From Octopus sinensis (lineage: Eukaryota): a stretch of 64,000 bases of DNA. The position numbers and the translations under genes were made by a program. The DNA lies in the NCBI RefSeq assembly GCF_006345805.1, contig NC_042997.1:50468001-50532000 (forward strand), read 5' to 3'. The notes below the pieces were generated by a model. It was not told where the DNA came from. It saw nothing but the letters and a program-made list of their open reading frames with translations, and did no database searches. Within the stretch, counting starts at the first letter, position 1; every line of letters starts with the position of its first letter. Positions 15,960 to 63,000 of the stretch are shown here, one piece after another.

Positions 15960-16620
15960 CAAATTTTGGCACAAGGCCAGCAACTTCAGAGAAGTGGGTA
16001 AGTCGATTACCTTGACTTCCAGCATTCAAACTGGTTCTTATTTTACTGACACCGAAAGGATGAAAGACAAAATCAACCTCAGCAGAATTTGAACTCAGAT
16101 CATAAAGACAAATGAAACACTGATAAACATTTTACCCTGTATGTTAACTATTCTTCTTGCCACCTTTTTGAAAGTAGAAATATTCTTTTCTACTCTCGGC
16201 ACAAGGCTCGAAATTTTGGGGGAGGGGCCCAGTTGATCAGATTGACACCCAGTATGCAACTGACACTTAATTTATTGACCCTGAAAGTATGAAAGGCAAA
16301 GTTGACCTCAACAGAATTTGAACTCAGGACATAAAGCCAGACAAAATACCGCTGAGCATGCTAATTTTTCTGCCAGCTCACCATCTTTGAAAGTAAAAAT
16401 ATTCTTTTCTACTCAAGGCACAAGGCCCGAAATTTTGGGGGAGGGGGGGCAGTTGATTAGATTGACCCCAGTATGCAACTGGTACTTAATTTATCGGCTC
16501 CGAAAAGATGAAAGGCAAAATTGACCTTGGTGGAATCTGAACTCAGAATGTAAAGACAGATGAAATACTGCCAAGCATTTTGCCTCGTGTGCTAACGTTT
16601 CTGCCAGTTCTCTGCCTTTC
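15960..16620 (-). mobile_element. Three head-to-tail copies of SINE family A
   Basis: Three repeats of GGCACAAGG...GATGAAAGGCAAAGTTGACCTC...GAATTTGAACTCAG...CTGCCAG at about 225 bp period. Confidence 0.8.
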
Positions 16621-32573: not shown

Positions 32574-34340
32574 ATGCATGTTGAAGTGTCTGTAGCTCTT
32601 AACTTCATTATTTCCTACCTTTACAACAAACTTCCCCGGCGCCGTGTGGATATGTTTGGTCATGAACTTGAAAAGCGTATGAAAACAAAATTTAATGGCC
32701 ACTGGTATCCTGAGCGACCCAATAAGGGTTCAGCTTACCGATGCATCCGAGTTAATGGAGAAAAAGTCGATCCTGACATTGAGAAGGCTGTTTATGGAAG
32801 CGGCTTAGAGATTGGTGAAGTCAGAAGTTATCTACCAGCTGATTTAACTCTTTGGATTGATCCGTCTGAAGTGTCATACCGTCTTAGTGAGAAAGGCACT
32901 GTCAAAATTTTGTATAGTGACAAGAAAGATGATGAACTTCTCGATACTGTTGATCATGAAGTACAGGCAGCAAACAAAGGCTTCAACCCAGAGGCTCAGT
33001 GCTTTAAGCCAATAGATTCTGTATCATCTTCATTGAGTAGTTTAAGTCTATCTCCGTCATCGCCAACTTCACCTGCTGGTTGGAGTACAGCTGCTTCCCC
33101 GTCCACTACTCTCTTCAGTTCAGCTGCAAGTACTAATATGTCCACAGTTGGTAACCAGGCTCCTGGCTCAACAACGCTCACTGTTGTTCATGCTCCATCT
33201 CCTGAAGCTGTTTCTACTACAGTTGCTGCCATAACTAATTTGTCCATATCTAATAACAACAACAACAGTAATAATAATAATAATAACAACAGTAATAATA
33301 ATAATGATAATAATAACAACAACAACAACAATACCACCAGTAACAATGCAAACAATTCAAGTAATACTAACATATCAACTGCTGCAGCTTCAGTTTCTCC
33401 TTCTGCAACTGTCCCATCTTGTCAGCTTTCAAGTCCTGTCATCACCAGTGCTACTCCTGTCATTGCCTCGAGGCCTACATCTTTTCTAACCAAACCAAAC
33501 CTGACATCTCCACAATTCACAGCTTCATCATTTGCACAGACTAAGTTTGGCTCTACCAAACTGAAGAGCCAGGTGAAACGTCCAACTAGATTGTCTCCTA
33601 TTGAATTTCGAAACTACTTCCGACAAAGAGCTGCTGGTTCATCCCTCCAGTCTTCACCAGTGACCCCTACTGGTGGTAGTCTAATTGGACCTGCTCCCCA
33701 ACCAAGTGTACCTGCAGTTGGTGTTTCACCAACTTTAGCTAATTCTGCACTTCGAGTTGGCATGGGTTTTGGTCACCCTAGCCCAGGTTCATCAGCCCCT
33801 GGTACAACACTGGCCACCCGCCCCAGATCTCTCTCTCCCCGTGATCCAAGGATTGAATTTTTATTTGAGCAACACCATCAACAACCACAACAACAGCAAG
33901 TGCAGCATCCACATCATAGATATATGGCATCTGTGAATCAAAAACCAATAGTTGCTTCTCAGTCAACTCTGCTCTCACCGGCACCCTCCCATGATGTGAC
34001 AGCAACTTCTCCACTACCTCACCACCAACAACTCAATCAGACTCTCTTACAACCAGGAAATTCTCAAACACAACCACACCAATCATCTCCTCAACCACCT
34101 CTGCCCTCTCCATCATCGACTGGTTTGACTCTTCGGGATTTTTACCAGTCACCACTTTCAAACCCCTTTCAACTGTCTCCAGCTCATGGCAGCTTGCCCT
34201 TCACTGATTTTATGCCCAACACTTTAAGTCCTAGCAACCCTTTACTCCCGGACAGTCGTAAGTCTTTCATAGAAGCCCTGAGCAACATAGGCAATCCTGC
34301 ATATAACAACCAATTCCATCATTTACTTGTTGCCAACTAA
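32574..34340 (+). CDS. TOB: Tob (transducer of ERBB2) ortholog, BTG/Tob antiproliferative, CCR4-CAF1 deadenylase adaptor
   Basis: N-terminus VALNFIISYLYNKLPRRRV...GHWYPERPNKGSAYRCI...WIDPSEVSYRL is the BTG domain of Tob type; PAM2 motif KGFNPEAQCFKP; Tob-specific FAQTKFGSTK motif; uninterrupted 588-codon ORF. Confidence 0.97.
   Translation: MHVEVSVALNFIISYLYNKLPRRRVDMFGHELEKRMKTKFNGHWYPERPNKGSAYRCIRVNGEKVDPDIEKAVYGSGLEIGEVRSYLPADLTLWIDPSEVSYRLSEKGTVKILYSDKKDDELLDTVDHEVQAANKGFNPEAQCFKPIDSVSSSLSSLSLSPSSPTSPAGWSTAASPSTTLFSSAASTNMSTVGNQAPGSTTLTVVHAPSPEAVSTTVAAITNLSISNNNNNSNNNNNNNSNNNNDNNNNNNNNTTSNNANNSSNTNISTAAASVSPSATVPSCQLSSPVITSATPVIASRPTSFLTKPNLTSPQFTASSFAQTKFGSTKLKSQVKRPTRLSPIEFRNYFRQRAAGSSLQSSPVTPTGGSLIGPAPQPSVPAVGVSPTLANSALRVGMGFGHPSPGSSAPGTTLATRPRSLSPRDPRIEFLFEQHHQQPQQQQVQHPHHRYMASVNQKPIVASQSTLLSPAPSHDVTATSPLPHHQQLNQTLLQPGNSQTQPHQSSPQPPLPSPSSTGLTLRDFYQSPLSNPFQLSPAHGSLPFTDFMPNTLSPSNPLLPDSRKSFIEALSNIGNPAYNNQFHHLLVAN
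33252..33332 (+). repeat. Coding (AAT/AAC)n repeat, poly-Asn tract in Tob
   Basis: 27 codons N5-S-N7-S-N4-D-N8. Confidence 0.95.
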
Positions 34341-46213: not shown

Positions 46214-47022
46214 TAACTATCTATCTATCCGCTCAGTTGAAGTCGACTCTCGGTTACTCGATGGATCAGTGTCCTCCAGCCAGTTCTATCCTGAGTCGCT
46301 TCTTTCAGATTGTCTATGTCCATTCTCATGTCACTCTTGATGGTGTCAAGCCAGCGGGTTCTTGGTTGGCATCTTCCTCTCTTGCCACTGACCATTCCGA
46401 GCATGATGTCCTTCTCCAGAGATTTTCTTCGCATAATATGACCAAAATATATCAATCTATGCTTGGTGATCCTAGCTTCTAGCGACAGTTTCGGCTTGAT
46501 CTGGTTAAAAACTTCTCCATTGATGAGCCTCGCTGTCCATGGAATCCATAAAAGTCTTCTCCAACACCAAAGCTCGAATGCATTAATTCTCTTCTGGTCA
46601 GCTTTCTTTAGTGTCCAGGTCTCGCATCCATATGTTGCTATTGGGAAGACAATTGCATTCACCAATCTGCATTTGGTAGCGAGTCTGATATCTCTACTCT
46701 TCCGGACCCTGCTCATGCTGACCATTGCCTCTCTGCCTAGTACTATCCGCCGTCTTATTTCTGGAGTGCAGTTACCATCTCGATTTATTTTGGAGCCAAG
46801 GAAGATGAAATCATCAACCACTTCGATCTCTTCATTATCGATCTTGATGCTGATGTTTGTTGTGGCTGCTGTTGACATGATCTTCGTTTTCTTGACATTG
46901 AGGTACAGCCCAAATTTCTCACTCTCTTTCTTAACTAGCAGAATAAGTTTCTCTATATCATTATTATTTTCTGCCAGCAGGGTTGTATCATCTGCATAGC
47001 GAAGGTTATTAATATTTCTTCC
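46214..47022 (-). mobile_element. 5'-truncated RTE-clade (BovB-like) LINE
   Basis: Open frame of 266 codons from GRNINNLRYADDTTLLA (RT YADD) through YGCETWTL and GRCQPRTRWLD to TAG at 46225, then an (ATAG)n tail. Confidence 0.92.
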
Positions 47023-47643
47023 TCTCTGTTGTTACGATGAAAATAAAAAACGTGTCTTTTGTAACAATGAACACGTTTTTTTATATAATTTTACTTATGT
47101 CTAATGAGTTCTCACTTATTACCCACAAGAATTTCGTATTTACTCAACTTGGTGTAATTTAACCCGGTCCACATTAAACTCCTCAGATATGTTTCCAGCT
47201 GGAATAGTTGCATGCCAAGATATCAGTGATTGTTTTTGAAGGCAAGCAAAGTGCTATAAAGGCTGTTCTTATAAACAGTTTCCACAACACCAGCTGCAGT
47301 TACCCATGAACTTAATGGTGATTATAGACTGAGACAAATTTCGTACAGACTACTTTTTCATCCTTTGGGAAATCCAAATCTTCACCATAATATGATGCTA
47401 ACAATTGACACTGCTTCTCTGAGTTATCTGTTGTACACGAAATATATCGTACCATTATCATTAAATCAGAATTCCATTTTCACAATAACCTTATCCAGAT
47501 TAAAATAACGTAGATATTTGAAGACAATCTTTAACAGTTTGATCTACCAATACTGATTAATCAGTCTGGGATTGCAGTTGATGAGAGACTCAGTTTGTCA
47601 TGAAACAAGAATTGTTTGCCAAGGTTGATTACTTTGATAATTT

Positions 47644-48274
47644 ATTTCTTTTATTGCCCACAAGGGGCTAAACATAGAGAAGACAAACAAGGACAGACAA
47701 ACGGATTAAGTCGATTACATCGTCTCTAGTGCATAACTGGTACTTATTTAATCGACCCTGAGAGGATGAAAGGCAAAGTCGACCTCGGTGAAATTTGAAC
47801 ACAGAATGTAACGGCAGACGAAATACCTATTTCTTTACTACCCACAAGGGGTTAAACACAGAGAGGACAAACAAGGACAGACAAATGGATTAAGTCGATT
47901 ACGTCGACCCCAGTGCACAACTGGTACTTATTTAATCGACCCCAAAAGGATGAAAGACAGAGTCGACCTCGGTGGAATTCGAACTCAGAACGTAACGGCA
48001 GACGAAATGCCGCTAAGCATTTCGCCCGGCGTCCTAACGATTCTGCCAGCCCCTCGCAGCATTTCGCCCGGCGTCCTAACGATTCTGCCAGCCCCTCGCA
48101 GCATTTCGCCCGGCGTCCTAACGATTCTGCCAGCCCCTCGCAGCATTTCGCCCGGCGTCCTAACGATTCTGCCAGCCCCTCGCAGCATTTCGCCCGGCGT
48201 CCTAACGATTCTGCCAGCCCCTCGCAGCATTTCGCCCGGCGTCCTAACGATTCTGCCAGCCCCTCGCCGCCGCC
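47644..48274 (-). mobile_element. Dimeric SINE family A with amplified 5' head
   Basis: Two about 185-bp bodies (47644-47828, 47829-48015) plus six copies of the 42-bp head. Confidence 0.88.
48016..48267. repeat. Perfect 6 x 42-bp tandem repeat
   Basis: Unit AGCATTTCGCCCGGCGTCCTAACGATTCTGCCAGCCCCTCGC at 48016, 48058, 48100, 48142, 48184, 48226. Confidence 0.97.
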
Positions 48275-49289
48275 CTCTGCAACTTATCTTTATTATGCAT
48301 TGCAAAGGTTTTCAAAGTTTCCATAATTTCTGCTGTTAGTAAGACTTTGGTTGCTGTTGTTTTTCTAGCTGTTATAACATCTGAGGCTGTATGTATTTGA
48401 CAGCATTATTGTCATCACAACTAACCTGATTAAGTGAGTGTTGCATTTGACATTCAATAATGCACTGCTACCCCATGTGTGCTTTGAATCATTATTATCT
48501 GTGAAGTCAAGTAATGCTTTTATGACATGAGCTACTTGCTCCACCATCTTTTCTCTCTTATAAAAGAACATCTTATTATATTCGAGCTTAAGTGTCTATG
48601 AAATTTGTTCTCCATCAGCCAATATACTTTCAAAGAGTACATGCCATTTGAGATTTGCTTCTACAAAAGTTGTAGTCCTAATATTTCCTAAGGTACTATG
48701 GAGTGGTTTAGTATCTACCACCGTTTGTTGGATAGCAAGATTTAGAAGGTATCCATAACCATGGACATAAATGGTGAGCAGAAAACAATGGATTAATCTG
48801 GTTGTCAACACACTATGAACACCACACATTTTCTGAATTACCAAAATATTTGCCAATTCCCAGCAGCAGCTTCTTGAGTCCAATCGTAACTAACTTGTGG
48901 AGAGTACTTCCTTCACTAGAAGACACTGCATAAAAGCTAGTGGCAGACGTTCTGATTTCTTCTTTACTGATGAACCTAAAAGAGATGCAATGGTTTCACA
49001 GGCAAGTTAACAAAGAAAGTAACTTTTGTATGTGGTAGATACTCAAGAGCAATAAGTAACAATAGCATATGAAAAATACGTTTTCTCAAATGTCCAAGAG
49101 AATTCCTAGAGGTAGTGGATAGCATCTGTTGTCTAGATGACCTTATTAGAAGGGCAGGAGGATGTTCTGAAATATAGTTGCTAGAATAAGAACAGTGGTG
49201 TGTATGTGTTGCTGAAATCAGTCAGATGATTCTTACCTCTTCATTAGTCACATCCTGTATTTAGTAATCGCTTCAAGTTTTCCTGTTCT

Positions 49290-49512: not shown

Positions 49513-50879
49513 CTGGTGTCCTTTCCACACCAGCATCAGGGCACCAGGTAATATTACTGAATAAGTGGGAATTATTTTACTTAACATTCCTTCTTCAGCT
49601 ACCCGGAACCAATGTTATTCAGTTTTTCAATATGGTACATCTTAATATAGTTTAATCTCCAAGTTAACATAGACACTTCTCTTGATGTATCGTGTTGTGA
49701 AGGTCACGATTAGTTTGTGGAAACAACGTGGCAATAAAAAAAGACAAATAAAGGAATTCTAGTTACGTTCTTTTAGTTTTTAGAAGAGGACAACTTGAAG
49801 CGATTACTAAATACAGGATGTGACTAATGGAGAGTTAAGAATCATCTGACTGCTTTCAGCAATAGTTTTTGTCTTTGAGTTTAAGACAAACTAATAAATA
49901 AACACTTCAAGGAGAGATTTAGTGTTTGGTTCATCTACTCCAATGAAATTTGTTCACCATAAAGGAACAGTAAGAACATTTAATATTTGGTAAAGAAATC
50001 TTTTTGGAGATGAAGCCAACAAGGGATCCTCTACGCCAAGGTTGGGGGATAAAAAAGAAAATGGAGAAATTGACATATACACATCAATTTATTCAAAGAT
50101 ATTCAAATCAATATAATATGAAATTCTTATCCCTACAACCGTTTCCATGGCCAATTAATTCAATTAGAGAAATTAAATTTAAAATTTTCATGTTGAAACT
50201 GGTTAATTGGAGAATTTTCCAGAAAGGAGTGTGTTTGTGTGTGTGTGTGGGAGGCAACGGGCTGGATGTGATGTGCTATATCAATTCGATATGATGTAGC
50301 TTACTACTAAAAGTAGCGTATAGATGTAACGCTTCAAGGTTCTCGCGTCGGAGTACCAGTAAACACCGAAGAATCAACACCAAGAAGGGAGAAATGTTAT
50401 TTACATATATTTAGTCGATTACTCGATAGGTTGTTACAGAGACAGTAGCAATTCTAGTGATAGTGGCGACAAGGATGACTTGCTGGTTAGTAGCTGATAT
50501 ATAGAAAAAGGTTTTCTGTCAGTAGAGAGGGAAAGAGTAAGGTAGTCATGGTGCTGACTAGAAAGGATAATGGCGGCATCGCATTTCTTACGGCCAAAAG
50601 CCTCTCTTAGCATTTCAAGTGAAGGGAAGTGCTGCTCTTGGTTAAGGCTGATGCAAAAGCGGGTGCTGCTCCTTGGTCTGGCTGACACATCAGAGGAAGA
50701 GATAGAAAATTCTCTGTTATATACACTATGGTCAGTAATGGAGGTCAAACCTTAAACAAAGGACTGACCTTTCCTTGAGTAGTACAGGTCCTAGGGGGTA
50801 GAGTGTTTCCTCATCAATCATCTAGTGTGGAGGATTTCCCACTCGTTTTGACAAGCAGCAAGCCGGTGGATTTGGTTTC

Positions 50880-51516: not shown

Positions 51517-51946
51517 ATTTAAAAGGATTCTTCCTTTAGACAAGCTAGCATTTTACAAAAACAATCATTATGCTAGCAACCAATCTACTTTCAAAAGATA
51601 TAATGAAAATAGTTCCATAACGCAAGAAAGTCATGAAGTTGTGTGAGCTTATTGCAAAGTGAGTGAACTCAATCTTAGGGGTAGGTTTACTAAAATTTGC
51701 ATAGTTGCGATTACAACGAACTTTAACACCAGAAACAAATCAGATTGCTAGGAGATATTAGTTTACTACAGAGGAGAGTTTCTAGCAGTAGAAAAGGCAT
51801 GATTAAAAATATCCAACTAACACTATAACCAGAGTATAACAATTGTATTTCATTCTACAGCTGTGGATGACACAGTAGACACAATAGTTTCAAATTTAGC
51901 ACAAGTTACTTTTTAAAATCTTCCGGTACACAGACCACAAATTAGT

Positions 51947-52156
51947 TATTTCTTTATTGCCCACAAGGGGATAAACATAGAGGGGACAAACAAAGGGATT
52001 AAGTCGAGTGCGTATCTGGTACTTAATTTATCGATCCCCGAAAGGATGAAAGGCAAAGTCGACCTTGGCGGAATTTGAACTCAGAATGTAACGGCAGGCG
52101 AAATACCCGCGAGCATTTTGCCCGGCGTGCTAACGCTTCTGCCAGCACGCTGCCTT
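51947..52156 (-). mobile_element. SINE family A with a 17-bp target-site duplication
   Basis: TSD ACAGACCACAAATTAGT at 51930-51946 and 52157-52173. Confidence 0.92.
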
Positions 52157-52329
52157 ACAGACCACAAATTAGTAAACTGCACTATACCTTAGATAAGCTT
52201 CGTAGGCAGGTACTTGGTCACTAAAAGGTGAACGCCTCTCTCAGAGCGTACTGAATTTACAGAAACCAGATTAGCGAATTAGTTAAGCAGGAGTTGAAGG
52301 GGGTAACCGTCGACAACAAATGAGGATTC

Positions 52330-52570
52330 ATCCTGAAAAGGACGATTAAAGTAGAATCAATTAGGTTTAGTAAAATCGTAGTGATAGCGAATAGGAGACT
52401 TGATTAGGAACTTGGAAAAAGCATCACATCCGAAATACTTGCGGTGAGATTAGCCCTCGACCAGTTCTTCAACTCGAAGTATGAAGATTGTACGTGCTCT
52501 AAGACACGAAGGGGACGAAGTCGCTCGATGGCCTCGGGTGGCAGAAGTGCAACGTGGTGATAAATCCATA
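52330..52570 (+). mobile_element. Old Tx1-like ORF2 fragment (EN-RT linker)
   Basis: Aligns by eye to 61640-61915 (GCCCTCGACCA...TTCAAC...GTGCTCTAAG...CGGGTGGCAGA). Confidence 0.6.
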
Positions 52571-53112
52571 ATTTGATCTTTTGCGAACTATAATAGGTGT
52601 ATAGTGATGTCGATTAAGTGACATCCTATAATTTAATGAGCATGAAAGAAAGAGGGGTCACCATCTTGTACGTAGTAACAATAAAATAGGAATTCGCGAG
52701 ACGTTAGCAATAAGTCATAACATATTTATTACAGGAGGTAATGCGTTAACATATAAGGTTAATTGAAGTAAAGGTCTGTAACATTACATAAACATATTCT
52801 TTTTTGCAATCACGTCTGCAAGTAAGTGAGGCGAACGTACGCGCGAGCGGTTGCGTGTGTGGCGGCCTGACTCAATGCCGGTCTAAGACTGGACAGACAC
52901 TGAATAAATTCCTTTATTGCTTATAAGGGCATACATAGAAAAGCACAAACGAGGGGCCAGGGACAAACAACGGACAGTTTTTACAGGGGAAGGGGTAGTG
53001 GTGTTGGGTTTACAAACAAGAAATCTGCGATGAAAAGCGGTATGAAGTTAAAAATTAAATGTAAATTAAAATATTTAGTAAAAATATACTGAATACACAC
53101 ACACAGATTTAT

Positions 53113-53150
<38 letters not shown>

Positions 53151-53289
53151 GGTTGAAAATATGTGGAAAAAAATATAAAAAGTGGAAGAGAAAAGCTTTC
53201 GTTTCAGATAGTTTAATAACTTTTTATAAATATATATATATATGGATGTCGTGAAATTTAATAGGTTTTGACTATTTAAATTAGCTTTT

Positions 53290-53890
53290 CAAGGGACATT
53301 GTACAGTTATCAATTTGCATGACAGAGGGGTCCGTCATATATATATATATATAGAGAGAGAGAGTTTGACCCCACCAGATTTGCGGGGCATTCTTGGAGA
53401 TCTGGATGATATTTATTTTTTCCTCTCTGCTGACGAGAATGGAGGCGGCTACCCACGCTGCTTCCACCACTGGAGGAATGTTTTTTATTTTTTAATCGGG
53501 CCGTCCTTCTACCCAGATACAGTGGAAAAACAGTATATTTCCACTTTGCACTGTTCAAGCCGAGAAGTCTCTGGCCTTCTCAGCTGACTCGGACTGCGCT
53601 TCTATTGTCGCAAACCTTATGCCTCTGGACAGATATTTGATTTCGTTCAACACCAGCCCAAGGCATTTTTCGATTGTTGATTCTTCTAAGTGTTCGAATT
53701 TTTAGAATTGAAGACTTTATAAATTATGGTCTTTTCTTTGGTTCTAGTTATCATTTCCGCAGGCGGCGTCAGTTTGCTTTGTCCTTCGGTTTCTGTAATT
53801 AGTCCGAAATACTGTTGTACTTCCTCTGGTTTTATCCAATTTTTTCTCCGCTGCCTACAGCGGCGGCAAAATTCAACTTCTTTGGCTGTT
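53290..53890 (-). pseudogene. LINE ORF1-like remnant Y (N-terminal part)
   Basis: MALVEQPKKLNFAAAVG...IEKCLGLVLNEIKYLSRGIRFATIE...KWKYTVFPLYLGRRTARL; homologous to remnant X; frameshifted. Confidence 0.55.
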
Positions 53891-53959
53891 CGACCAAAGC
53901 CATTTCACAATAATAATAATAATAATTTCATAGTAAAAAATACAAGAATAGAAAAATAG

Positions 53960-54645
53960 TGTTCCGCGAGGAACGCAGTCAACAATTCACACAAAAAAAT
54001 TTTCTGCTCCTCCCCCTTGCTGTTCTGTATTTTTTGGTCTTCATCTCTGCTCTCCGCATCTACCTTCTCCGTACCATCCTTCGACTTCACGTTCCTGCTA
54101 CTTTCCTCTTGTCTCACCTCCATTGATATTTGGTTGTTAAGAAGGAGGCAATTCACTTTGATTATGGCCTTCTCTCTGTAGTGGTAGCATGTGGGCGGTC
54201 TTCCCTCCACTACCACACACAGCTTCAACTCTTCTGGCAACTCTATCTCTTTTGTTATTTCTTGTATGTCTGGTGCGGTATCCTGGATTATGACTTCCAG
54301 GCCATATCCCCAACAGTTTAGTTGTTTAGTACGGCTTACCTGCAGCACTTGAGAGTCTTCCTTTTTGTCTATTAGAATAGCTGTGAGCAGCACATCTCGT
54401 TAATCTCTGGGGGCACCCAGCAATCATCACTCTCACCCTTCGCTTCCCAAGGTATGTTGGCAGGCGTGCCCATTTTTCAGTTTTCAAGGTTACGGTGGAG
54501 TGCTTTGCTGCCTCCTCCACAGTCGGGAAGCGCACCTCCACCGTATCAAACTTCCTTCCTTTACAGTAGTATTCCTTGTTATTTATTTTTTTTCAAGCAT
54601 TCTTCCAAATCTTCTTCGTCCCCACTGGGGGAGAAAATACAACAA
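53960..54645 (-). pseudogene. LINE ORF1-like remnant X with decayed CCHC zinc knuckle
   Basis: EECLKK...CKGRKFDTVEVRFPTVEEA...LPTYLGKRRVRV...VVEGRPPTCYHYREKAIIKVNC (decayed CX2CX4HX4C). Confidence 0.65.
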
Positions 54646-54769
54646 AAGTAAGTAATACGACAAGTCAAACAATCGCCAACAATAGGTAAACGAAGAACAA
54701 CTTATCCGTTACGATGCAAAAATCAACTGGGAATCACGATACAAAATCAACTGAGTAGACAGACAGACA

Positions 54770-55010
54770 CTAGGTGGCGCGAATTTAGAAATTTGTTCCT
54801 TTATATAAGGGATGAACCGGAAGTCCCCGACTTCTACGTTAACCGAAAGCTTCTAGAATGTTCTGGAACTTTCTAGAAGGTCGAGGGAGATTACTCTTGT
54901 TAGATCCCTTTTCCGTTTTGCTTTCCTGCTTCACCGCCATGATTCACTACAGGTGTATGTAAAGATTTAAAACAGTATTTCATTTGATTGTTCGGAACAA
55001 ATGGCGGGCC
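54770..55010. promoter_or_regulatory. Compact promoter: CTCF-like, TATA (-), ETS/GABP, HSE, TCT/TOP initiator (+), Kozak ATG, YY1-like
   Basis: ACTAGGTGGCGC (54769-54780), TATATAAA on minus (54800-54807), ACCGGAAGT (54816-54824), CCCTTTTCC (54906-54914), CACCGCCATG (ATG 54939), GTATGT donor (54955), AAATGGCGG (54999-55007). Confidence 0.6.
54850..54879. promoter_or_regulatory. Perfect six-pentamer heat-shock element
   Basis: cTTCtaGAAtgTTCtgGAActTTCtaGAAg, alternating nTTCn/nGAAn in exact register. Confidence 0.85.
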
Positions 55011-55074
55011 GGAATGTAAGATGAATTTCAGACCCTACCTCGACGACCTGTCGCAACTCTCGGCAAGATGGTTT

Positions 55075-56590
55075 GCTGCATAAGGGGCAAATTGCCTGGT
55101 TTAGATGGTCTATTCTATGAGCTTTACTTTTACACGCCAGACTTGTCTGGAGACCTCTTCGCTAATACCTACCGCAATTAACCATAGAACGGAAGAATTA
55201 CCAGCTCTGTGAGTCGATGACCACTGGCATAGCAAGAAAGGACCCAAACAAGGGGGATCACATTGATAATGTCCAGTCCATAACTCTGTAAAACGCTGAT
55301 TTCAAAACTTTTGCCAAGTTATTAACAAAGGGGTTGCCATTTGTCTGATTGGTGATGTGCAATAATGCGTCATTCTAAGCAAGATCTCTCCTCGACAACT
55401 TCTACGTCATGCGATACATCATAGGGATGGTGTGTAAAAAAAATCTGGTAAGCGCGTGGCTCTTATCAATGTAAATCGACTACAAGTTTTTGATAGGATT
55501 GGTCACCAATACCTGACAGCTGTTCTCACAGCAGCCAGTTTCGGTTTCGGATAACGAAAAACCTGGCTGATGACGGTCAAGGCTGATCTGGAACCCAACC
55601 TAGGCCCCCATATCTACGGCGTTCGCCGCTGGAATAAGGAGTGGTTGGAGATCACGCGGTCGTTAGCCTCAAATCGCCAAGCTTGGTCGGCGTTTGTGAG
55701 AGATGCAGCACTGAGGATGAATGAAGCCAGCTCAACCCACCCCGGGTGAATGCTGTAAGAAGAAGAAAGAAGAAGCCGGTTTCGGTTACATTTTCTCGAC
55801 TTCCTTACAGCAATGTAGAGTAACACCAGGTTCGATGAATGACTACCTTACGGAACCATTCATTATTTTGCGCTCGGTTCATCAATGTTGTCCCTTCTCA
55901 TCTCTTCTTTATATACTGACACTTGAGCCACTATTGCGAAAAGTAAAGACGTTGAGGAACAGCCCATGCGAGCTAGGACTAAGAGAACCGCGTTGGCATT
56001 CGCGGAAAACATCACCGTCACATGATCGGCACAATTCTGAGGAAATATAGTGCCAAGACCAAAACAAAAGAAATAAATAAAAGGAAAGACAATCAAAGTA
56101 AGTCAGTGAGCCTGCAACTCCGTTCCTGGAGAGGTAATTCCTTGCCGCCTAAGAGTGACGTGTGACATTGGACGGACGGACTCGCTAAATCGTTTGGGGA
56201 TAGTCTGGTTCAGATTTTCAGTGGAAAAGAAATGGGACGAAATGACGAGCAGGATGACCAATCTCACCTTGAAATGGATTACGAGAAAGCTATCCGTTTG
56301 ATTGTCGCGCTTAGCTCCAGTTCATTCCTGGCCGGGCTGGAGCAACTATTCTGTTTTCTGTGGACGAGACGCTTTTTGCTGTTCAGGCTCGCTGTTGTCA
56401 ATACTCGCTGAATGGAGATGTCGTGGCTGATGATGCGCTGACATACTCTGGGGCAGCAACTTCTCCAGCCTTTCCTTGTAAACGAACAGGGTGGTCACCG
56501 TTTGTCAGACACGCTTCACCGCAGCTTGTCTATTGACTGAGCTGCAGTCCTGGATATAGCGTTGACCGAAGCAGGATGCCTAGCACGTGA
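55075..56590 (+). pseudogene. Degenerate Tx1-clade reverse transcriptase
   Basis: PGLDGLFYELY, KDPNKGDHIDN..SITL*NADFKTFAKLL, RSVHQCCPFSSLLYILTLEPLLRK are homologous to the young copies; many stops. Confidence 0.8.
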
Positions 56591-60087: not shown

Positions 60088-63000
60088 CCATCAACAGCAA
60101 AACCCAAAGGAACAGAAAAACAAAGAAAACACACACAAACTGATCCCCCATCCCTTATACCGCACTCAACACACACAAACACTCAACAACCAACAACAAC
60201 GAAAACAACAACACAACCACTTACACAGACATACATAGAAGCCCACAACATACCCCTACCCCCTTCTGATTCCTCAGAAATTTCGTCGGAAGACGAAACC
60301 AGTGAGGAATGGCAAATAGCTACAAAAAGAAGGAAAATAAAGAGCAGAAACACAACCAAACCAAATGCAAACACGAACAAAGCAGGGGGAAATACATCTC
60401 CCCGAAGACATTTCAAAACCCAACGCAAACAACAGCCACACCAACACCACAAAAAACATATACAGCAAACATGCTCACAGCCATAGACACCAAAAACACA
60501 AATTTGATGGAATACATCCATCAAAAACAAACATAACAGAAGATGACATAAAAACAAACAACCACCCATACACAACACCACCAGGACCACATCAAAATAA
60601 TACACATCTCCAAAAGTCTGCACCACACACTCAAAGGCATTTTCCCCAGTGCGGTTGGTAAATGCCAAAAATATCTCACAAAGAAACTGTACTGGGATCT
60701 TCTCGAGGACAAACCAACGGAGGAGAAAGCAAAAACTTTCGAGCAGTAAGTAACCCTCTGTATTCTAATTCATTAGAACTATGATCAATATTGGTTGTGT
60801 AAATGCGCGTGGCTTGGGGTCCCCTTGGAAACAAGGGTACCTCTTAAATGACATAAAGTCACATAAGTTAGAAATCATAGCCAAAGCGAGACCAGACTCC
60901 ACAATCCGCGGGCCCTAAAGACCATGTTTGGCGGACAGTTCAACATTTATTTTTCCCCCTGTCTGCCGAGAATGGGCGGTAGTGGCACCGCGGTACTTTT
61001 TCACAAGAGTCTGGATCTCAATGTAAGGACAATATTCGTAGACCCGGAGGGTAGACTGGTCGTCCTGGATGTCGACGGCAGCAATGGGTGCGCTTTTCGG
61101 CTCGTATCAGTTTACGCACCGCCCTTAACAGGTCGGGCGGATTTCTTTCAACGTCTAGAAGTTTTCTTGGGAACGTCTCGTCCTTTACTCTTAGTGGGGG
61201 ATTGGAATGCTACCTTGGACACGCATGTAGACTACGTGGGTAGAGATAGGAATAGACGGGGATGCAAATGCCTCAGAGACCTGCTCAGACGCTTTCAACT
61301 GTCTGACAGGTTTCGACTAGACCACCCGAATGCGCCAACGTGGACATGGAGCAACCGCATCGGTCGTCGAGATCGTATCTAGATAGGATACTGTGTAGGA
61401 CAGTAGATAGAGATAGCATAGGATGTCCACAATTCCACATAGTCAGCTACACGGATCACAAACTTGTGACATGTACGCTAGACTTAGGTAAGACACTTAG
61501 GCAGGGGTCCCGGATACTGGAAACTAAACGCGTCTTTCCCATCGAGACAAGTTTTCAGAGACCGGATTAGCACACTAGTAAAGAGGGCTTTGACGGGAGC
61601 CATCATCAACAACAAATGGTGGTTTGCCCTCAAGAGAGCAGTAAAAGCAGAAGCGATTAGGTACAGCAAAGCACTAGCCATAGATAGAAATAGAGTAGAG
61701 GGTGAGCTAGTTAGAAGCTAGAAGAGGCAATTAGAAGCGGCATCGCATCCGACGTTTTGGGCGCGAGGTTGGCCCTCGACCAACACTTCAACGCCAAACA
61801 CGAAGGATGTGCTGTCAGAGCTAGGATGCGTGCTCTAAGGAACGAAGGTGGTGGAGCGCGAGAGAGGCCCGGGTGGCAGAGGCGCAACACAGGGCAACAA
61901 AGCCACCATTCGGTCACTGGTAGATGAACAGGGGCGCGAATTGCTCGAGCCAAGTAAAATGTGTGAGGCCTTTCAGCAGCATTTTGCCCGAACTGTTCGG
62001 AACGAGTGGAGGGCAAGAACGTAGGGTGGACTTCAGTGCCTACCTACTAGTAGCCTACCACGACTCTCGACAAGAAAGGCAGGTGCTGCGAAGGTGCCAT
62101 CACGGCGGCGGAAGTGCGGGAAGCGATGGCAGAATGCTCGAAGGACAAATCACCGGGTTTGGATGGTCTACCCTACGAGCTTTACAATTGTATGCAGACT
62201 TGTTTGGAGATCTCTTGGCGGCGGTGTACTGCAACTGGCAGCAAAACGGGAGCATTCCTGGTTTTGTGAGCCGAGGAGCCGTAACACTGCTGAAGAAAGA
62301 TCTAAACAAGGGAAATGTAATAGATAACTTTAGGCCCATCACTCTGCTTAATGCAGACTTGAAAATTTTGGCCAAGGTGCTAGCCAAGAGGTTGGCGCTT
62401 GTCATCGAGAAACTGGTCGACAAGGCGCAAACATGCGCGCCGTGCCAGGCCGGACCATCCATGACAACTCCATCTGATGCGCTACATCATAGACAGGGTA
62501 GTTAACGACCTGGCATGGGTGGGGCCTGATCAACTTGGATCAATCAAAAGCCTTTTGATAGGGTAGACCATCGATACTTGGAGGCAGTCCTGAGAGCGGC
62601 TGGTTTCGGTCCCGTCTTCCGCGGCTGGATAGCTGCCTTGTACAGAGGCATCCGTTCGGTAATTCGCGTAAATGGACATCTATCGACCTTTCGACATTGC
62701 ACTTCGGTCCGTCAGGATGCCCCCTCTCGGCGCTTCTATACGTATTGACTCTTGAGCCACTACTGCGGAAGCTGGCGACTCTAAGGGGCATCCCGCGAGA
62801 ATTGGGATGCGGACGAGCGTGTCTGCATACGCGGACGACGTCACCGTCATAGTGTCTAGCCACGAGCACATCGAGCTGGTCGGCGAGACACTGAAAAACT
62901 ACGAAGCGGTGACAGGAGCGAAAATCAACCGGGAAAAGTCAGTGGCTTGCGACTAGGCACCTGGAGAAGCAAGCCATGCCGTCCACCAGCGCCTCCGTCG

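What the first reader, a model, noticed from the sequence alone, without database searches (positions are those of the whole stretch)
54745..55010. Bidirectional heat-shock/TOP promoter embedded among retrotransposon debris
Seen within 260 bp: a perfect 6-unit HSE; leftward, ETS then TATATAAA 43 bp from the HSE (hsp70-like spacing) pointing into the ORF1 remnant X; rightward, a TCT-like initiator CCCTTTTCC, a pyrimidine 5' UTR, Kozak CACCGCCATG, five codons (MIHYR), a GTATGT donor and a downstream YY1-like site. Established: GABP upstream, TCT start and YY1 downstream typify ribosomal-protein/TOP genes, and HSF binds such arrays cooperatively. Inference: either exon 1 of a stress-inducible TOP gene whose first intron holds the Tx1 copies (MIHYR recalls TCTP MIIYR, but five codons cannot identify it), or an orphan promoter; in either case heat shock could transcribe LINE sequence on both sides.
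Basis: partly seen in the sequence, partly recalled or inferred. Interest (0 to 1): 0.7.

Follow-up and report, generated by a model that had tools for sequence, protein, structure and literature searches.

The report
Orphan heat-shock promoter inside transposon debris
A textbook-looking heat-shock switch (six perfect HSF-binding units plus a TATA box) really is present in this octopus DNA, but it sits at the end of a 2.3 kb piece inserted into a dead LINE retrotransposon; the supposed first exon of a ribosomal-protein-type gene beside it is an accident of that insertion junction.

Summary
The window is Octopus sinensis chromosome CM016859.1, about 50.468-50.532 Mb. The six-unit HSE (54851-54878) is real, unique in the window, and far beyond chance.

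The surroundings overturn the "bidirectional heat-shock/TOP promoter" reading. An old LINE copy on the + strand is split. Its ORF2 runs to 52594 and resumes at 54959, colinear with two relatives. The 2348 bases between (52603-54950) are an insertion flanked by an 8-bp direct repeat, AGGTGTAT, found nowhere else in the window.

- The whole promoter-like cassette lies in the last ~285 bp of that insertion.
- The "GTATGT donor" is target-site duplication plus LINE sequence.
- The "YY1 site" is LINE ORF2 coding sequence.
- The "exon" (MIHYR) ends exactly at the insertion boundary.
- The HSE-ETS-TATA cassette faces inward (leftward) into two decayed, unrelated LINE ORF1 fragments.
- It is not part of that LINE's ORF1 or 5'UTR.

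Best reading: an orphan, unidirectional heat-shock-type promoter carried on a transposed segment. The segment may be the promoter end of a non-autonomous hAT-like element. No second copy could be found with these tools, and activity is untested. Interest is low to moderate.

The parts
51912..52594 (+). Left part of old LINE copy 1 (ORF2, endonuclease-RT linker region). It carries a SINE-like insertion at about 52016-52162.
   Evidence: tblastx against the fuller LINE copy 3 (61433-61810). Nucleotide alignment runs to copy-3 position ~61915. The same region aligns with L014 12488-12706.
52595..52602 (.). Left copy of the 8-bp direct repeat AGGTGTAT (target-site duplication).
   Evidence: AGGTGTAT occurs only twice in the 64-kb window, at the two breakpoints. 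Random 62-nt window pairs share any 8-mer 4% of the time.
52603..53090 (-). Left end of the insertion. Non-coding, with no LINE, Pfam or Rfam homology. It starts (T)AGTGATG... and has a minus-strand AATAAA at 52918.
53091..53344 (.). Microsatellite-rich stretch ((TA)n, (CT)n) that cuts off ORF1 fragment B.
   Evidence: only microsatellite matches to the rest of the window.
53345..53995 (-). LINE ORF1 fragment B. Short 5'UTR with (ATT)n, ATG at 53902, profile positions 13-188 of 295. Contains stops and frameshifts.
   Evidence: Profile HMM of 22 octopus ORF1 proteins. tblastn. The (ATT)n-containing 5'UTR resembles that of L014.
54013..54619 (-). Profile positions 76-275, truncated at both ends, CCHC knuckle decayed. 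Homology may reach ~54665.
   Evidence: 191 relatives, best E = 2.5e-27. Coordinates. No nucleotide similarity to fragment B.
54666..54950 (-). Promoter-like cassette at the right end of the insertion. It is unrelated to LINE ORF1 or 5'UTR, and the terminus reads ...TTCACTA(C).
   Evidence: No ORF1 profile match between 54620 and 55000. No similarity to L014 or the rest of the window.
54851..54878 (.). Six-unit perfect heat-shock element.
   Evidence: one match, 0.00 expected even with 2 mismatches; four overlapping 3-unit matches.
54817..54824 (+). ETS/GABP-type core CCGGAAGT between the HSE and the TATA box.
   Evidence: unique in the window, but within chance expectation.
54800..54807 (-). 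TATATAAA box directing leftward (inward) transcription. The predicted start is a CA at about 54775, and a minus-strand AATAAA lies 188 nt downstream at 54587.
   Evidence: The start site is an inference from spacing only.
54906..54953 (+). These are the last 48 bases of the insertion, read on the outward strand.
   Evidence: frame reads MIHYRCM then stop. One search gives the motif frequencies.
54951..54958 (.). Right copy of the target-site duplication AGGTGTAT. It supplies the first four bases of the 'GTATGT donor'.
54959..56569 (+). Right part of LINE copy 1 (ORF2, RT region). It contains the 'YY1-like' AAATGGCGGGC at 54999-55009 as coding sequence.
   Evidence: tblastx against copy 3 from 54966 onward. 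Nucleotide alignments. L014 matches reach 56569.

Best explanation
**What is shown**
- An old LINE copy on the + strand was split by a 2348-bp insertion (52603-54950), flanked by an 8-bp target-site duplication.
- The insertion is a mosaic. Both ends are non-coding. Between them lie two decayed, unrelated LINE ORF1 fragments (minus strand) and microsatellites.
- The HSE-ETS-TATA cassette occupies the last ~285 bp of the insertion and faces inward (leftward).
- The rightward 'TCT start, Kozak ATG, MIHYR, GT donor, YY1' series comes from reading outward across the insertion junction into LINE ORF2. It is not an exon.

**What is inferred**
- The cassette is an orphan, unidirectional heat-shock-type promoter that arrived on a transposed DNA segment.
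- Most economically it is the promoter end of a non-autonomous cut-and-paste element. Supporting this: an 8-bp duplication, both termini reading TAGTGA (which fits the hAT rule YARNG), a promoter facing inward ~150 bp from the terminus, and a poly(A) signal near the other end.
- The interior of that element would later have been filled by LINE insertions and trimmed by deletions.

**If active**
- HSF trimers would bind the six-unit array cooperatively and fire the TATA promoter about 45-75 bp away.
- The product would be a short non-coding transcript. It would run into ORF1 debris, with the first AATAAA 188 nt downstream.
- No protein product is expected.
For: **Organism and locus.** The Tob/BTG ORF maps exactly to GCA_006345805.1 CM016859.1. 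That assembly also encodes XP_036364761.1, named Octopus sinensis by its source.

**Split LINE**
- The left part (51912-52578) matches copy 3 at 61433-61915. The right part resumes at 54957 and matches copy 3 from 61962.
- The joined flanks align colinearly with copy 3 and with an independent relative, L014.
- The spacing between homologous points is 450-466 nt in the relatives and 2704 nt here.

**Target-site duplication.** AGGTGTAT occurs only at the two breakpoints.

**HSE.** It is unique in the window with zero chance expectation. Variation falls only at unconstrained positions.

**The cassette is not LINE sequence**
- The ORF1 profile begins at position 76 at 54619, and nothing matches upstream of that.
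- The family 5'UTRs in fragment B and in L014 lack any HSE.

**Junction artefact.** The 'YY1' region translates as LINE ORF2, and the 'donor' overlaps the duplication.

**Termini and poly(A) signals.**
Against: - No second copy of either insertion end was found, so mobility as a family is unproven. Searches covered the window, 27 kb of another O. sinensis chromosome, and a six-frame pseudo-protein search of 5.8 billion predicted proteins.
- The inverted termini are only 6 bp, and no longer inverted repeat exists. In the hAT reading the duplication is 7/8 identical.
- No transposase remnant was found.
- The mosaic interior needs several later events, or else the whole segment arrived as ectopic filler DNA.
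- CpG content does not mark the cassette as a protected promoter.
- There is no expression, chromatin or HSF-binding evidence.
Confidence: 0.55

Rival explanations
1. Inert relic. The HSE-TATA cassette is a fragment of a former heat-shock gene promoter, or a fortuitous array. It was copied here as filler during double-strand-break repair or a rearrangement, and it has no present activity. Its perfection reflects young age rather than selection.
For: - The cassette sits in a transposon graveyard with no gene to drive.
- CpG observed/expected is about 1 across all the neighbouring debris, so nothing marks the cassette as special.
- No other copy was found.
- Perfect HSE arrays of the same TTCTAGAA/TTCTGGAA type are common in unrelated eukaryotic DNA, and some of them are minisatellite-like.
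Against: - All 18 constrained HSE positions are intact, while the free positions differ between units. The adjacent ORF1 fragment A is heavily decayed.
- The HSE, ETS and TATA spacing is that of working heat-shock promoters.
- An exact 8-bp flanking duplication points to transposition rather than filler DNA.
Confidence: 0.27
2. The cassette is the 5' end, with an internal promoter, of a minus-strand non-LTR retrotransposon. ORF1 fragment A would be the remainder of that element, so the HSE is part of a multicopy LINE 5'UTR.
For: - ORF1 fragment A lies directly downstream on the same strand.
- The insertion is flanked by a duplication of a length that LINEs can make.
Against: - Fragment A starts at profile position 76 of 295, with no N-terminal region and no start codon between it and the cassette.
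- Two 5'UTRs of this LINE group (fragment B and L014) carry (ATT)n and no HSE, and they show no similarity to the cassette.
- A TATA-driven start at about 54775 would leave the HSE out of the RNA, so retrotransposition could not propagate it.
- Neither end of the insertion has an A-rich or LINE-type 3' tail.
Confidence: 0.08
3. A bidirectional heat-shock/TOP promoter whose rightward side is exon 1 (MIHYR) of a stress-inducible TOP gene such as TCTP, with the LINE copies lying in intron 1.
For: - A TCT-consensus match, a 7-nt pyrimidine run, and a good Kozak context CACCGCCATG, which occurs twice in the window.
- GT dinucleotides follow codon 5.
- MIHYR resembles the TCTP N-terminus MIIYR (from memory).
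Against: - The exon-intron boundary coincides with the insertion boundary, and the 'donor' is duplication plus LINE sequence.
- CAG|GTGTAT lacks the +5 G. GTATGT occurs 4.8 times per kb and the TCT consensus 1.7 times per kb.
- The 'YY1' site is LINE ORF2 and fails the AANATGGCG consensus.
- No TCTP-like exon anywhere in the window.
- The promoter would have had to arise inside a LINE by insertion.
Confidence: 0.03
4. A Helitron carrying HSEs, as in Caenorhabditis.
For: Helitrons are known to spread HSEs (PMC6927752, abstract seen).
Against: - The insertion has a flanking duplication.
- Its ends do not read 5'-TC...CTRR-3' in either orientation, and it is not inserted between A and T (read by eye).
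Confidence: 0.02

Closest known systems
hsp70-type heat-shock promoters (HSE array upstream of a TATA box; established knowledge, Drosophila hsp70 as the type case)
   Same: - Contiguous inverted nGAAn units in perfect register, six here.
- A TATA box a few tens of bp downstream.
- A CA start candidate about 32 bp after the TATA.
- A predicted cooperative HSF-trimer mechanism.
   Different: - No chaperone gene or any intact ORF downstream.
- The cassette lies inside a transposed segment nested in a LINE.
- The HSE-TATA gap (43 bp, holding an ETS site) is longer than in Drosophila hsp70.
Transposon-borne HSEs: Helitrons in Caenorhabditis (PMC6927752); ONSEN LTR elements in Arabidopsis (from memory)
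   Same: An HSE array residing on inserted, apparently mobile DNA. In principle it could confer heat-inducible transcription on neighbouring sequence.
   Different: - Not a Helitron: it has a duplication and the wrong termini.
- Not an LTR: no terminal direct repeats.
- Only one copy is known here, so dispersal is not shown.
Non-autonomous hAT-superfamily DNA transposons
   Same: - An 8-bp target-site duplication.
- Both termini begin TAGTG, which fits YARNG.
- A promoter facing inward near one end and a poly(A) signal near the other.
- An interior lacking transposase.
   Different: - Only 6 bp of terminal inverted repeat.
- The duplication does not fit the weak nTnnnnAn preference.
- No transposase remnant, no autonomous partner and no second copy found.
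TCT/TOP promoters of ribosomal-protein and translation genes (from memory: Parry et al. 2010)
   Same: A YYCTTTYY match followed by a short pyrimidine run and an ATG in good context.
   Different: - The motif is frequent in this sequence.
- No translation-related gene follows.
- The 'exon' is the terminal 48 bases of an insertion, and the 'intron' begins in the target-site duplication.

Membership tests
Heat-shock (HSF-dependent) promoter | At least three contiguous inverted nGAAn units in register | tested here: met
   Six units at 54851-54878. Unique in the window, with 0.00 expected even with 2 mismatches.
Heat-shock (HSF-dependent) promoter | A core promoter (TATA and a start site) within tens of bp on one side | tested here: met
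   TATATAAA at 54807->54800 on the minus strand, 43-44 bp from the HSE, and a CA at about 54775. TATA-like strings are very frequent in this window, so this is weak on its own.
Heat-shock (HSF-dependent) promoter | Drives a chaperone or other stress gene | tested here: not met
   Only decayed LINE ORF1 fragments lie downstream. No Pfam domain in any frame of the insertion.
Heat-shock (HSF-dependent) promoter | Heat-induced transcription and HSF occupancy | not testable with these tools
   No expression or chromatin data were available.
TCT/TOP promoter with a first coding exon | A TCT initiator followed by a pyrimidine tract at the transcription start | tested here: inconclusive
   CCCTTTTC matches YYCTTTYY at 54906, but the consensus occurs 111 times in 64 kb. 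The start site is unknown.
TCT/TOP promoter with a first coding exon | An exon ending in a genuine splice donor, continuing into host intron and a coding gene | tested here: not met
   The boundary equals the insertion boundary. The 'donor' is duplication plus LINE ORF2. The frame stops after MIHYRCM. There is no TCTP-like exon in the window.
TCT/TOP promoter with a first coding exon | A downstream YY1 site | tested here: not met
   AAATGGCGGGC fails AANATGGCG and is LINE ORF2 coding sequence aligned with copy 3 and L014.
hAT-superfamily non-autonomous transposon | An 8-bp target-site duplication | tested here: met
   AGGTGTAT is 8/8, or TAGGTGTA/CAGGTGTA is 7/8 in the register that gives TAGTGA termini.
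hAT-superfamily non-autonomous transposon | Terminal inverted repeats beginning YARNG | tested here: inconclusive
   Both ends read TAGTGA, but the inverted repeat is only 6 bp and no longer one exists.
hAT-superfamily non-autonomous transposon | Other copies, or an autonomous partner with hAT transposase | tested here: not met
   None in the window, in L014 or in the protein collection. The octopus genome itself could not be searched at the DNA level.
LINE 5'UTR / internal promoter | Contiguity with the start of ORF1 and similarity to other 5'UTRs of the family | tested here: not met
   ORF1 fragment A begins at profile position 76. The 5'UTRs of fragment B and L014 show no similarity and no HSE.
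Helitron | 5'-TC...CTRR-3' ends, insertion between A and T, no duplication | tested here: not met
   The ends read TAGTGA...TCACTA(C) and have a flanking 8-bp duplication.

The most novel reading that the evidence does not exclude
The insertion is one member of a so-far undescribed cephalopod DNA-transposon family (hAT-like). Its own inward-facing promoter would be a canonical six-unit heat-shock promoter. That would make it a heat-inducible transposon that also scatters ready-made HSE-TATA cassettes through the octopus genome, in the way Helitrons do in Caenorhabditis and ONSEN does in Arabidopsis.
Probability: 0.1. Interest if true: 0.55.

Novelty: new member of a known kind. Interest (0 to 1): 0.22.

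Why it matters
As it stands the result matters mainly as a correction. A convincing-looking bidirectional promoter with a first exon dissolves once the nested-insertion structure is mapped. This shows how insertion junctions can mimic exon/intron architecture.

The HSE array itself is too perfect to ignore. If it proves heat-responsive, it would be an example of stress-inducible non-coding transcription arising from mobile DNA in a cephalopod. Octopus genomes are unusually transposon-rich. If the segment is one copy of a family, it would add a mollusc case to the short list of transposons that spread heat-shock elements.

Tried and rejected
- **Word-indexed protein search with the ORF1 remnant:** nothing. 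The exhaustive HMMER search then found 191 relatives, so the earlier blank was a sensitivity limit.
- **Pfam on the ORF1 remnant and on all six frames of the insertion:** no family.
- **Rfam at E <= 1 on 52000-55500:** nothing.
- **Exact look-ups of three window transposon ORFs, to get neighbouring gene calls or sequence beyond the window:** not on record.
- **Search with P0009, to fetch more octopus loci:** only itself and one fragment, neither with contigs.
- **Six-frame pseudo-protein of both insertion ends against 5.8 billion proteins:** no hit even at E <= 10. This is weak evidence against a high-copy family.
- **Metagenome scan for the HSE pattern:** 12 contigs with the same HSE core but unrelated flanks. 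These are independent HSE arrays, not relatives.
- **Long terminal inverted repeats or LTR-like direct repeats for the insertion:** none.
- **HSE as a slippage-born tandem repeat:** TRF finds none, and the units differ only at free positions.
- **CpG island test:** the cassette (o/e 1.14) does not stand out from neighbouring LINE debris at 0.9-1.2.
- **TCTP exons in the window by tblastn:** none below E = 3.
- **Helitron and LTR readings:** rejected on termini and the duplication.

Full report
**Where we are**

The window's only long host ORF is a Tob/BTG-like protein at 32574-34340. It is encoded identically on NCBI assembly GCA_006345805.1, chromosome CM016859.1, at 50,500,574-50,502,340. 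The same assembly encodes XP_036364761.1, which its source names Octopus sinensis. So the window is O. sinensis, about 50,468,001-50,532,000. It is AT-rich and crowded with microsatellites and retrotransposon fragments.

**The observation**

- HSE at 54851-54878.
- CCGGAAGT at 54817-54824.
- TATATAAA on the minus strand at 54807->54800.
- CCCTTTTCC at 54906-54914.
- CACCGCCATG at 54932-54941.
- MIHYR codons at 54939-54953.
- GTATGT at 54955-54960.
- AAATGGCGGGC at 54999-55009.

Only the HSE is statistically meaningful. The 28-nt, 18-specified-base pattern has one match in 64 kb even with two mismatches allowed, against 0.00 expected. The three 10-bp units (TTCTAGAAtg, TTCTgGAAct, TTCTAGAAgg) differ only at positions HSF does not read. 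TRF does not see a tandem repeat. That pattern is what a functional, or recently functional, HSE looks like. It is not what fresh slippage looks like.

The other motifs are weak. The TCT consensus occurs 111 times in the window. GTATGT occurs 305 times, because of (TATG)n repeats. TATA-like heptamers occur 43 times per kb. The 'YY1' site fails the AANATGGCG consensus.

**The context that changes the reading**

A degenerate LINE on the + strand (copy 1) is interrupted. tblastx and nucleotide alignment against a fuller copy in the same window (copy 3, with endonuclease from 60924 and RT beyond; Pfam) give two matches.
- 51912-52578 matches copy 3 at 61433-61915.
- 54957 onward matches copy 3 from 61962.

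An independent relative was fetched from another O. sinensis chromosome (L014, the LINE next to ORF1 protein P0008). It gives the same picture. Homologous points that are 450-466 nt apart in the relatives are 2704 nt apart here.

Joining the two flanks gives a sequence that aligns colinearly with both relatives across the junction. The breakpoints carry the same octamer, AGGTGTAT, at 52595-52602 and 54951-54958. These are its only two occurrences in the window. Random pairs of 62-nt windows from this region share any 8-mer 4% of the time.

So 52603-54950 (2348 bp) is an insertion with an 8-bp target-site duplication.

**Consequences for the finding**

The entire promoter-like cassette lies in the last ~285 bp of that insertion.
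- The 'exon' MIHYR is the last 12 bases of the insert (54939-54950) plus the first 3 bases of the right duplication copy, and the frame stops two codons later.
- The 'GTATGT donor' is four bases of duplication plus two bases of LINE.
- The 'YY1-like' site is LINE ORF2 coding sequence (LFGTNGGPE here, LFGTSGGQE in copy 3).

The TOP-gene half of the finding is therefore a junction artefact.

**What the insertion contains**

An exhaustive HMMER search found 191 relatives, the best at E = 2.5e-27. The named ones are uncharacterised or 'CCHC-type domain-containing' proteins of O. bimaculoides and O. sinensis. Pfam has no model for them.

The C-terminus of P0008 also matches 60468-60707, just upstream of copy 3's endonuclease. 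In L014 the P0008 ORF is followed by ORF2 homologous to copy 1. So this is the ORF1 of the same LINE group.

A profile of 22 family members resolves two separate minus-strand fragments.
- Fragment A covers profile positions 76-275 at 54619->54013.
- Fragment B covers positions 13-188 at 53874->53345. It has an ATG at 53902 and a short 5'UTR carrying (ATT)n.

A and B share no nucleotide similarity, so they come from different subfamilies. Below B lie microsatellites, and then 52603-53090 matches nothing.

Nothing between 54620 and 55000 matches the ORF1 profile. The LINE 5'UTRs available for comparison, from fragment B and L014, have no HSE and no similarity to the cassette. The cassette is therefore not the LINE's own 5' end.

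**Most likely mechanism**

Shown:
- An HSE-ETS-TATA cassette with heat-shock-promoter geometry sits at the inward-facing end of a duplication-flanked insertion.

Inferred:
- It is an orphan, unidirectional heat-shock-type promoter that arrived on transposed DNA.

Four details fit a non-autonomous cut-and-paste element of the hAT kind, whose interior later took in LINE fragments and lost sequence.
- The 8-bp duplication.
- Both termini reading TAGTGA, which fits YARNG.
- The promoter ~150 bp inside one end and pointing inward.
- A minus-strand AATAAA at 52918 near the other end.

This is far from proven.
- The inverted repeat is only 6 bp.
- There is no transposase remnant.
- I found no second copy in the window, in L014, or by a six-frame pseudo-protein search of 5.8 billion predicted proteins.

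The octopus genome could not be searched at the DNA level with these tools. A metagenome scan for the HSE core returned 12 unrelated HSE arrays.

If the cassette is active, HSF trimers would occupy the six-unit array and fire the TATA promoter. The start would be near 54775 (-), and the first AATAAA is 188 nt downstream. The product would be a short non-coding RNA running into ORF1 debris.

**Rivals**
- **Inert relic of a promoter moved by repair or rearrangement (0.27).** The graveyard context, unremarkable CpG content and lack of copies fit this. The intact HSE next to decayed ORF1, and the exact duplication, argue against it.
- **LINE 5' promoter (0.08).** The truncated ORF1, dissimilar family 5'UTRs and the absence of a LINE tail contradict this.
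The junction analysis contradicts this.
- **Helitron-borne HSE as in Caenorhabditis (0.02; PMC6927752).** The duplication and the termini contradict this.

**Verdict**

The HSE is real and striking. The bidirectional heat-shock/TOP promoter with a first exon is not real. What remains is an orphan heat-shock-type promoter inside nested transposon debris. Its activity and copy number are unknown. Interest is low to moderate. It would rise if the segment proves to be one copy of an HSE-carrying transposon family in cephalopods.

Noticed in passing
window 32574-34340 (+): A single long ORF (588 aa) with a Tob/BTG-like N-terminus (recognised from memory), then long low-complexity Ser/Asn/Gln/Pro tracts. 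It is the only evident host gene in the window, and it is the ORF that anchored the window to O. sinensis CM016859.1.
   Followed up: partly
window 52016-52162; also 16182-16577 (-), 47620-48019 (-); L014 796-860, 16662-16724, 21882-22029, 23006-23135: A short SINE-like repeat of about 150 bp, present several times in the window and in the unrelated O. sinensis locus L014 at 82-91% identity. One copy is inserted in the left part of LINE copy 1. Its translation appears as the N-terminus of the Logan-derived 'protein' P0143.
   Followed up: partly
window 47974-48309 (+): A 42-nt tandem repeat with six or more copies, four of them identical. It reads through as HFARRPNDSASPSQ repeats in an ORF.
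   Followed up: no
window 50212-50224 (-): A second, minimal three-unit HSE (TTCTGGAAAATTC), 4.6 kb from the main array. It is the only other 3-unit match in the window.
   Followed up: no
window 46225-46878 (-): An intact 217-aa ORF that looks like the C-terminal part of a different LINE reverse transcriptase (RTE/BovB-like by eye). Pfam gives no hit.
   Followed up: partly
window 53905-53925 and L014 9722-9777: The 5'UTR of this octopus LINE group carries an (ATT)n microsatellite just upstream of the ORF1 start, in two diverged copies. It may be a conserved feature of the family's 5'UTR.
   Followed up: partly
window 54705-54752 (-): An imperfect 24-nt tandem duplication (CAGTTGATTTTGTATCGTGATTCC / CAGTTGATTTTTGCATCGTAACGG) in the leader-like stretch between the putative start site and ORF1 fragment A. 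TRF does not flag it.
   Followed up: no
L013 (Ga0134123_10052674) and L004 (Ga0302309_10139785): Metagenome contigs in which HSE-like 10-mers (TTCTGGAAnn/TTCTAGAAnn) form long minisatellite-like arrays. Perfect HSE runs can therefore also occur as repeats in unrelated eukaryotic DNA.
   Followed up: no
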